From NCBI RefSeq assembly GCF_048593235.1, contig NC_133621.1:219749238-219813237 (forward strand): DNA of 64,000 nt, read 5' to 3'. The notes below the pieces were generated by a model. The model ran no database searches. It had not been told where the DNA came from and saw nothing but the letters and a program-made list of their open reading frames with translations. Position numbers and translations under genes: made by a program. This document shows, in pieces, positions 35,468 through 35,834 of this stretch (the first letter of the stretch is position 1; each line of letters begins with the position of its first letter). The stretch is from Sminthopsis crassicaudata (lineage: Eukaryota).

Positions 35468-35834
35468 CTGACTCCATGTTAACATTCCTTGATCCTTGGA
35501 TTCAAGGCCTGATGGACTTTTCCTTTGAATGATGTCTTCTCCTCCTCCCCCTTCCCCCTTGCTTCTAGCAATGACTTTCCTCTGAAATTCTCTCAAATGT
35601 CTTTCCTTAACTAGTCCTATGAAATTGCCTCTAGCTGTTCTTCCTGTGATTTTTTCAGTAACCCATCCTAACATATGTTTTCTCTGTAGAAATTGGAGGA
35701 GGATGCTGTTCTTGACCATTAGCAAAGGACTCCGGCATCAGACCTACAGGAAGAGGAGTTGCAGTAATCTGGGAGTCCAGTAATCCATATCCAGGGCCTG
35801 AGAGAACCAGAATCTGTAGCTGGAAATCATTTTT
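35468..35834. repeat. Chimeric B+A duplicate copy (order reversed relative to source)
   Basis: B (33820-34040) is fused directly to A (32858-33004) through a 2-nt TA microhomology at 35687-35688. Confidence 0.95.

What the first reader, a model, noticed from the sequence alone, without database searches (positions are those of the whole stretch)
35468..35834. Circularly permuted duplication that looks like a reintegrated DNA-circle junction
Seen: the source order is A (32858-33004), a ~815-bp spacer, then B (33820-34040). The copy 1.4 kb downstream is B fused directly to A through a 2-nt TA microhomology. That is the junction expected if 32860-34040 (~1.18 kb) had circularised, or had been tandemly duplicated and then trimmed. 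A short direct repeat (ccatgtta at 35460 and 35474) marks the left insertion edge. The copies differ by about 2-3.5%, which argues against assembly error. The fusion also creates a strong new acceptor, ttttctctgtag|AAATTGGAGG, in front of A. Copy 2 keeps a base missing in copy 1 (~32966); restoring it puts exon 32861-33038 in frame with the 33090 exon. Inference: eccDNA reintegration or replication template switching.
Basis: partly seen in the sequence, partly recalled or inferred. Interest (0 to 1): 0.7.

Follow-up and report, generated by a model that had tools for sequence, protein, structure and literature searches.

The report
Two-piece local DNA copy upstream of GDF11
A 370-base stretch upstream of the growth-factor gene GDF11 in this marsupial is a patchwork copy of two nearby pieces joined in swapped order: a real but ordinary scar of DNA copying or repair, with no sign of a gene or a function.

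Summary
Window 35468-35688 copies 33820-34040 (B, 217/221 identical). Window 35687-35837 copies 32858-33007 (A, 5 mismatches and a 1-nt indel). B is fused directly to A over a shared TA, whereas the source order is A, an 812-bp spacer, then B. These are the only duplicates of 88% identity or more in the 64 kb.

The locus is non-coding DNA 4.8-7.8 kb upstream of the GDF11 start codon.

That looks like an 8-bp target duplication (chance about 0.3%) and marks copy 2 as the inserted, derived copy.

There is no poly(A), no terminal inverted repeat and no GT-AG at the junction on either strand, so the event was DNA-level.

My best reading (about 50%) is a local "cycle of templated insertions": two template jumps during replication or repair. 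The circle reading stays possible (about 20%), but the copy lacks the 812-bp spacer, about 69% of the proposed circle.

The exon, reading-frame and acceptor claims are not supported.

Polarity, age (roughly 2-10 My) and assembly correctness therefore remain inferred.

The parts
32858..33007 (.). Source segment A (150 nt). It lies 45 nt right of a (TG)17 microsatellite, and its right edge is a T6 run.
33008..33819 (.). Spacer S (812 nt) between A and B. It is not represented in copy 2 or anywhere else in the window.
33820..34040 (.). Source segment B (221 nt). It contains CCATGTTA at 33826-33833.
34041..35467 (.). Intervening 1427 nt, not homologous to A or S. It holds a SINE-like core near 34119-34145 and an old L1-like fragment at 34463-35055.
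35460..35467 (.). Left-flank 8-mer CCATGTTA, the putative target-site copy.
35468..35688 (.). B', a copy of 33820-34040 with 4 mismatches. The internal CCATGTTA is at 35474-35481.
35687..35688 (.). TA shared by the end of B and the start of A, i.e. the 2-nt microhomology at the fusion.
35687..35837 (.). A', a copy of 32858-33007 with 5 mismatches and a 1-nt indel.
35836..35843 (.). Right-flank 8-mer CCTTGTTA (7/8 to the left-flank 8-mer). Its CC overlaps the last 2 nt of homology to A.

Best explanation
Copy 2 (35468 to about 35835) is a derived, germline-fixed insertion. It was built in one DNA-level event from two nearby templates in the same orientation. A polymerase, or a repair-synthesis end, left the target site at the 8-mer CCATGTTA. 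It copied B (221 nt, 1.4 kb upstream), then jumped back 1.18 kb over a TA microhomology and copied A (about 146 nt). It then returned to the target slightly behind its point of departure, re-copying 8 nt.

In the vocabulary of cancer and human germline structural variation, this is a small local 'cycle of templated insertions', i.e. iterative template switching of the FoSTeS/MMBIR type.

Shown: the structure, the junction sequences, and the absence of RNA or transposon hallmarks. Inferred: the polarity (copy 1 ancestral), the single-event origin, the replicative mechanism, and an age of roughly 2-10 My. The insert has no demonstrable function.
For: Two templates are strung together at one locus while both sources are retained.

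All three junctions show 0-2 nt microhomology: C at the left, TA in the middle, CC at the right.

An 8-bp near-perfect duplication of the target flanks the insert, with chance about 0.3%. This matches the definition of a 'cycle', which re-replicates a segment of the host chromosome (PMC7025897).

The templates are local, in cis and in direct orientation. Segment sizes of 146-221 nt fall within the range of templated insertions reported at human germline junctions, from 7 bp to kilobases (PMC5120786).

A (TG)17 tract lies beside one breakpoint and a T6 run at another. Both are plausible stalling sites.

The adjacent substitution plus indel inside A' is compatible with error-prone synthesis.

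This model needs no loss of the 812-bp spacer.
Against: Junction sequences alone cannot separate replicative switching from end-joining of pre-formed fragments, as PMC7450558 states.

The 8-mer also occurs inside B, 6 nt from its start. Simple microhomology priming there would have started the copy at 33834 rather than 33820, so that third copy is unexplained.

Polarity is not tested by any outgroup. No read evidence was obtainable.
Confidence: 0.5

Rival explanations
1. Segment 32858-34040 (1.18 kb) circularised, or was duplicated head to tail, through the TA microhomology. The circle was opened inside the spacer, lost about 812 bp, and was captured at a staggered break 1.4 kb downstream.
For: The B-end to A-start junction is exactly the head-to-tail joint of one contiguous segment. 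A 2-bp microhomology at the fusion and small duplications at the integration site are the scars reported for circle-mediated duplications in cattle and humans (PMC7450558). The 8-bp target duplication suits capture of a free fragment at a staggered break. The insert size (about 368 bp) is in the range of small eccDNA (own knowledge).
Against: About 69% of the proposed circle (the whole spacer) is missing. The copy's outer ends are 812 bp apart in the source. Published cases keep the whole circle with a single opening point. No trace of the spacer lies beside copy 2. This model needs extra resection or deletion steps that template switching does not.
Confidence: 0.2
2. Reverse polarity. B-A at 35468-35837 is the older arrangement, for example the single repeat left after two direct B-A repeats flanking S recombined. 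The popped-out circle (B-A-S) re-entered 1.4 kb upstream after opening at the TA, giving A-S-B with nothing lost.
For: It uses a complete circle: A+S+B is all present in copy 1. The TA is present at both outer ends of A-S-B but only once in copy 2. The 8-mer duplication around copy 2 would then be the target duplication of the original element.
Against: It requires an unobserved ancestral repeat-S-repeat structure. The B-A unit does not have TG...CA ends abutting the 8-mers. An 8-bp duplication is atypical of LTR elements (own knowledge). No primer-binding-site-like TGG follows the repeat. No other copy exists in the window. It needs more steps than the best model.
Confidence: 0.1
3. Assembly artefact: a chimeric or collapsed stretch created by the assembler.
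For: No reads could be laid. The window contains gaps or masked runs elsewhere.
Against: The copies differ at 9 sites plus an indel (2.5%), far more than haplotype differences would usually give. Both copies sit in unique flanks. The nearest N run ends 1.5 kb away. It is the only such duplicate in 64 kb. A target duplication at the edges is a biological signature, not an assembler signature.
Confidence: 0.07
4. A mobile or RNA-mediated copy. Candidates are a retrocopy of a back-spliced (circular) RNA, an L1-mediated templated insertion, or a transposon family whose other members lie outside the window.
For: Target-site duplication-like 8-mers flank the insert. The permuted order is what a back-splice would give.
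Against: No GT-AG (or AT-AC) is possible at any partition of the TA junction on either strand. There is no poly(A) or poly(T) at either end, and the target is not TTTT/A-like, so the class-1 features listed in PMC5110952 are unmet. There are no terminal inverted repeats. No other copies exist in the window.
Confidence: 0.05

Closest known systems
Cycles of templated insertions and local n-jumps (PCAWG structural-variant classes, PMC7025897); FoSTeS/MMBIR iterative template switching (PMC5120786)
   Same: Two templates are copied and strung together at one locus, and the sources are retained. Junctions have 0-2 nt microhomology. The string returns to the host with re-replication of a short host segment. 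The templates are local.
   Different: This one is very small (146 and 221 nt templates, 8-nt re-replication). It is fixed in a germline genome of a marsupial rather than somatic or clinical. The replicative origin is inferred, not shown.
Duplications through circular DNA intermediates (cattle colour-sidedness translocations; human segmental duplication pairs, PMC7450558)
   Same: Permuted block order between source and copy. A 2-bp microhomology at the fusion point. Micro-duplication at the integration site. Non-tandem placement.
   Different: Those events involve tens of kb to Mb and keep the whole circle with one opening point. Here the copy is 368 bp, lies 1.4 kb from its source, and lacks the 812-bp middle of the putative circle.
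Class 2 templated sequence insertion polymorphisms (DNA 'patch' repair of a double-strand break, PMC5110952)
   Same: Insertion of a short templated patch without poly(A) and without an L1 endonuclease site.
   Different: Those patches come from distant loci and are thought to be RNA-derived. This one is chimeric, local, and has a target duplication.

Membership tests
Templated-insertion cycle / iterative template switching (FoSTeS/MMBIR) | Two or more templates from different positions joined at one locus, with the sources retained (copy gain) | tested here: met
   B and A are both present at the source and in the copy
Templated-insertion cycle / iterative template switching (FoSTeS/MMBIR) | Microhomology or blunt joints or tiny insertions at every junction, with no long homology | tested here: met
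   C, TA and CC at the three junctions; the flanks are otherwise unrelated
Templated-insertion cycle / iterative template switching (FoSTeS/MMBIR) | Return to the host with re-replication of a host segment ('cycle') | tested here: inconclusive
   The 8-mer matches 7/8 on both flanks, chance about 0.3%. The pre-insertion site itself is not available.
Templated-insertion cycle / iterative template switching (FoSTeS/MMBIR) | Single replicative event | not testable with these tools
Circle-mediated duplication (eccDNA reintegration) | Permuted order with a head-to-tail fusion junction | tested here: met
   34040 is joined to 32858 over TA
Circle-mediated duplication (eccDNA reintegration) | The copy holds the whole circle, opened at one point (the outer ends of the copy are adjacent in the source) | tested here: not met
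   The outer ends map to 33820 and about 33005, which are 812 bp apart. The spacer is absent from copy 2 and its flanks.
Circle-mediated duplication (eccDNA reintegration) | Physical evidence of a circle | not testable with these tools
   No circle-enriched or read data were available
L1-mediated retrocopy / class 1 templated insertion | Poly(A) tail, TTTT/A target site, target-site duplication | tested here: not met
   A duplication-like 8-mer is present, but there is no poly(A) or poly(T) at either end and the target is GTTA|CCCA
circRNA-derived retrocopy | The junction coincides with canonical splice sites in the source | tested here: not met
   No GT-AG at any of the three possible partitions on either strand
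DNA transposon with 8-bp target duplication (hAT-like) | Terminal inverted repeats; multiple copies | tested here: not met
   No inverted repeats. There are only two copies in the window. Genome-wide copy number was not testable.
Protein-coding or known RNA exon | An open frame with homologues, or a match to a curated family | tested here: not met
   Stops in all + frames. No Pfam match above cut-off. Only sub-threshold Rfam matches. The junction ORF has no relatives.

The most novel reading that the evidence does not exclude
The insert is the fixed germline footprint of a small extrachromosomal DNA circle (about 0.4-1.2 kb) that re-entered the chromosome 1.4 kb from its origin at a staggered break. 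That would be a natural, datable example of small-circle reintegration in a mammalian germ line. The recurring 8-mer would hint at a sequence-guided capture step.
Probability: 0.15. Interest if true: 0.45.

Novelty: new member of a known kind. Interest (0 to 1): 0.2.

Why it matters
The finding is a clean, nucleotide-resolution example of a two-template copy-and-paste event fixed in a wild mammal's germ line. It has all three junctions and a target duplication intact. Such scars show that the processes catalogued in tumours and patients also shape normal genomes at sub-kilobase scale.

It sits in the regulatory neighbourhood of GDF11, next to a conserved RFX-site module. Nothing found here suggests that it changes a gene or its control, so its value is as a mutational-mechanism specimen and not as a functional element.

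Tried and rejected
- **Orthologous loci.** The 86-aa ORF spanning the junction found nothing in the protein collection. GDF11 exon 1 was searched by reference as its natural ORF, scoring residues 188-318 only.
- **Spliced GDF11 model.** It was not joined. Only exon 1 was used, by reference.
- **Non-marsupial contigs.** The JGI, ENA and Logan contigs carrying GDF11-like exon 1 (P0001-P0003) were not pursued. They are not marsupial-identical and may be eutherian or human contamination.
- **Tandem duplication or triplication followed by deletion.** Rejected because the 1427 nt between B and B' are unrelated to A or S. The model would also need a deletion ending exactly at the B end.
- **LTR element reading (B-A as an LTR).** Rejected: no TG...CA abutting the duplicated 8-mers, no PBS-like TGG, and no other copies.
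- **Back-splice, L1 and hAT readings.** Rejected.
- **Further templated pieces beside copy 2.** None found.
- **Metagenome, bacterial-genome, phage, plasmid and E. coli collections.** Not searched, because they cannot hold this locus.

Full report
**What is there.** The repeat search, a self-BLAST of the window and pairwise alignments agree. Window 35468-35688 is a copy of 33820-34040 (segment B, 221 nt, 4 mismatches). Window 35687-35837 is a copy of 32858-33007 (segment A, 5 mismatches and a 1-nt indel at 32966 / 35795-6).

In the source the order is A, an 812-nt spacer S (33008-33819), then B. In the copy B runs straight into A. The dinucleotide TA is shared by the end of B (34039-34040) and the start of A (32858-32859), and it occurs once at the fusion (35687-35688). 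The copy begins 1427 nt after the end of B.

A megablast of the whole window against itself finds no other duplicate of 88% identity or more. The flanks of copy 2, the spacer and the interval between B and B' match nothing relevant, even with 7-nt words.

**Context.** The minus strand carries GDF11.
- The mature TGF-beta domain lies in ORF 21160-21531.
- Exon 1 lies inside ORF 27668-28630, with the ATG at 28069.
- Exon 1 is 131/132 identical to P0122, the GDF11 protein recorded for wombat and sugar glider.

The animal is therefore a marsupial, and the finding lies 4.8-7.8 kb upstream of the GDF11 start codon. The spliced GDF11 model was not joined, and only exon 1 was searched, by reference.

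It also recurs as CCTTGTTA at 35836-35843, directly right of the insert.

In 200,000 random placements in this window:
- a 7/8-or-better match between the left-flank 8-mer and any of four offsets at the right edge occurs in 0.28%;
- an exact recurrence of the flank 8-mer within 24 nt occurs in 0.46%.

The flank-to-flank repeat looks like an 8-bp target duplication. It marks 35468 to about 35835 as an insertion into a site that read ...ATTACCATGTTA|CCCAAAGG... Its CC doubles as a 2-nt microhomology with 33006-33007. The three junctions thus carry C, TA and CC. I could not find a model that also explains the third, internal copy of the 8-mer. Priming on it would have started the copy at 33834, not 33820 (notebook, unexplained).

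**What it is not.**
- **Not an RNA back-splice.** None of the three possible partitions of the TA junction puts GT-AG (or AT-AC) at the source boundaries on either strand.
- **Not L1-mediated.** The insert begins CTGACT and ends CATTTTTG, with no poly(A) or poly(T) at either end, and the target is not TTTT/A-like. The L1-mediated class of templated insertions (PMC5110952) is therefore excluded.
- **Not a DNA transposon.** There are no terminal or nearby inverted repeats, so a hAT-like element is excluded despite the 8-bp duplication.
- **Not an LTR element.** The B-A unit does not have TG...CA ends abutting the duplicated 8-mers, and no PBS-like sequence follows it.
- **Not a tandem duplication or triplication followed by deletion.** The 1427 nt between B and B' are unrelated to A or S, and the model would need a deletion ending exactly at the B end.
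- **Not demonstrably coding or a known RNA.** Nine ORFs of the region give no Pfam match above cut-off. Rfam gives only sub-threshold miRNA-like matches, one of them on the TG repeat. The junction-spanning 86-aa ORF has no relative among 5.8 billion proteins.
- **No evidence for the 'strong new acceptor'.** It has 9/12 pyrimidines before TAG. Sites passing a stricter rule occur 307 times in the window, or 2.4 per kb per strand.

**Mechanism.** The simplest account is one DNA-level event with two templates. Synthesis leaves the target, copies B, jumps back 1.18 kb over TA, copies A, and returns to the target 8 nt behind where it left.

This is the configuration called a cycle of templated insertions, or a local n-jump when the templates are local, in the pan-cancer catalogue. 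There, cycles are defined by re-replication of a host segment (PMC7025897). The same signature of microhomology plus templated insertions of 7 bp to kilobases is ascribed to iterative FoSTeS/MMBIR switching in human germline insertions (PMC5120786). A (TG)17 tract 45 nt from the A breakpoint and a T6 run at the other A breakpoint are plausible stalling sites, but that is inference.

Its scars (2-bp microhomology at the fusion, micro-duplication at integration) are those reported for circle-mediated duplications (PMC7450558). Those cases keep the entire circle, opened at one point. Here the 812-nt spacer, about 69% of the circle, is missing and leaves no trace, so extra resection steps are needed.

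A reverse-polarity model exists and uses a complete circle. In it, copy 2 is the remnant of a repeat-S-repeat structure and A-S-B is the re-inserted circle. It needs an unobserved ancestor. As PMC7450558 itself notes, junction sequences cannot separate end joining from replicative switching. I therefore give template switching about 0.5, the circle or trimmed tandem about 0.2, reverse polarity about 0.1, assembly artefact about 0.07, and a mobile or RNA route about 0.05.

**Age.** There are nine substitutions in 367 aligned sites (K = 0.025; Poisson 95% range 0.011-0.047). A and B do not differ significantly (Fisher p = 0.49). With assumed neutral rates of 2.2-3.5e-9 per site per year (general knowledge, not measured for this lineage), the event is roughly 4-6 My old, with an outer range of about 2-10 My. 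This predicts presence only in close relatives.

**Limits.** Assembly correctness, polarity, single-event origin and copy number elsewhere in the genome are therefore inferred from the window alone. The 2.5% divergence, the unique flanks, the 1.5-kb distance from the nearest N run and the target duplication argue for a real event.

**Verdict.** This is a real-looking but ordinary sub-kilobase complex duplication of a known kind, with no sign of function. It is a neat specimen for mutational-mechanism surveys, and its interest is low. A word search of the scan's notes found no earlier record of this kind of event.

Noticed in passing
window 35460-35467, 35474-35481 (= 33826-33833), 35836-35843: The same 8-mer CC(A/T)TGTTA occurs three times around copy 2: in both flanks and 6 nt inside the insert. 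A plain target duplication explains only two of the three.
   Followed up: partly
window 32667-32909 (-): An 80-aa minus-strand ORF runs through segment A and the (TG)17 tract. The indel shifts its frame in copy 2, and it has no Pfam match. It is probably chance.
   Followed up: partly
window 21160-21531, 22148-22744, 27668-28630 (all -): These ORFs hold GDF11 exons 3, 2 and 1. The exon 1 ORF stays open for about 187 codons upstream of the ATG (28069) through a GC-rich leader. Exon 1 is 131/132 identical to the wombat and sugar-glider protein.
   Followed up: partly
window 40001-42000, 54001-56000, 62001-64000: CpG-rich stretches (observed/expected 0.38-0.64), probably promoters of neighbouring genes. 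They were not identified here.
   Followed up: no
window 34463-35055 vs 2140-2732 (inverted); 36008-36300 vs 2485-2713 and 57170-57409: Old interspersed repeats (about 71-74% identity, L1-like by eye) flank the unique stretch that received copy 2.
   Followed up: no
window 34119-34145, also near 43299, 7539, 21934, 58870, 51876(-): A SINE-like core (ttttatagatgaagaaactgaa) recurs across the window. One copy starts about 20-80 nt right of segment B.
   Followed up: no
   Followed up: no
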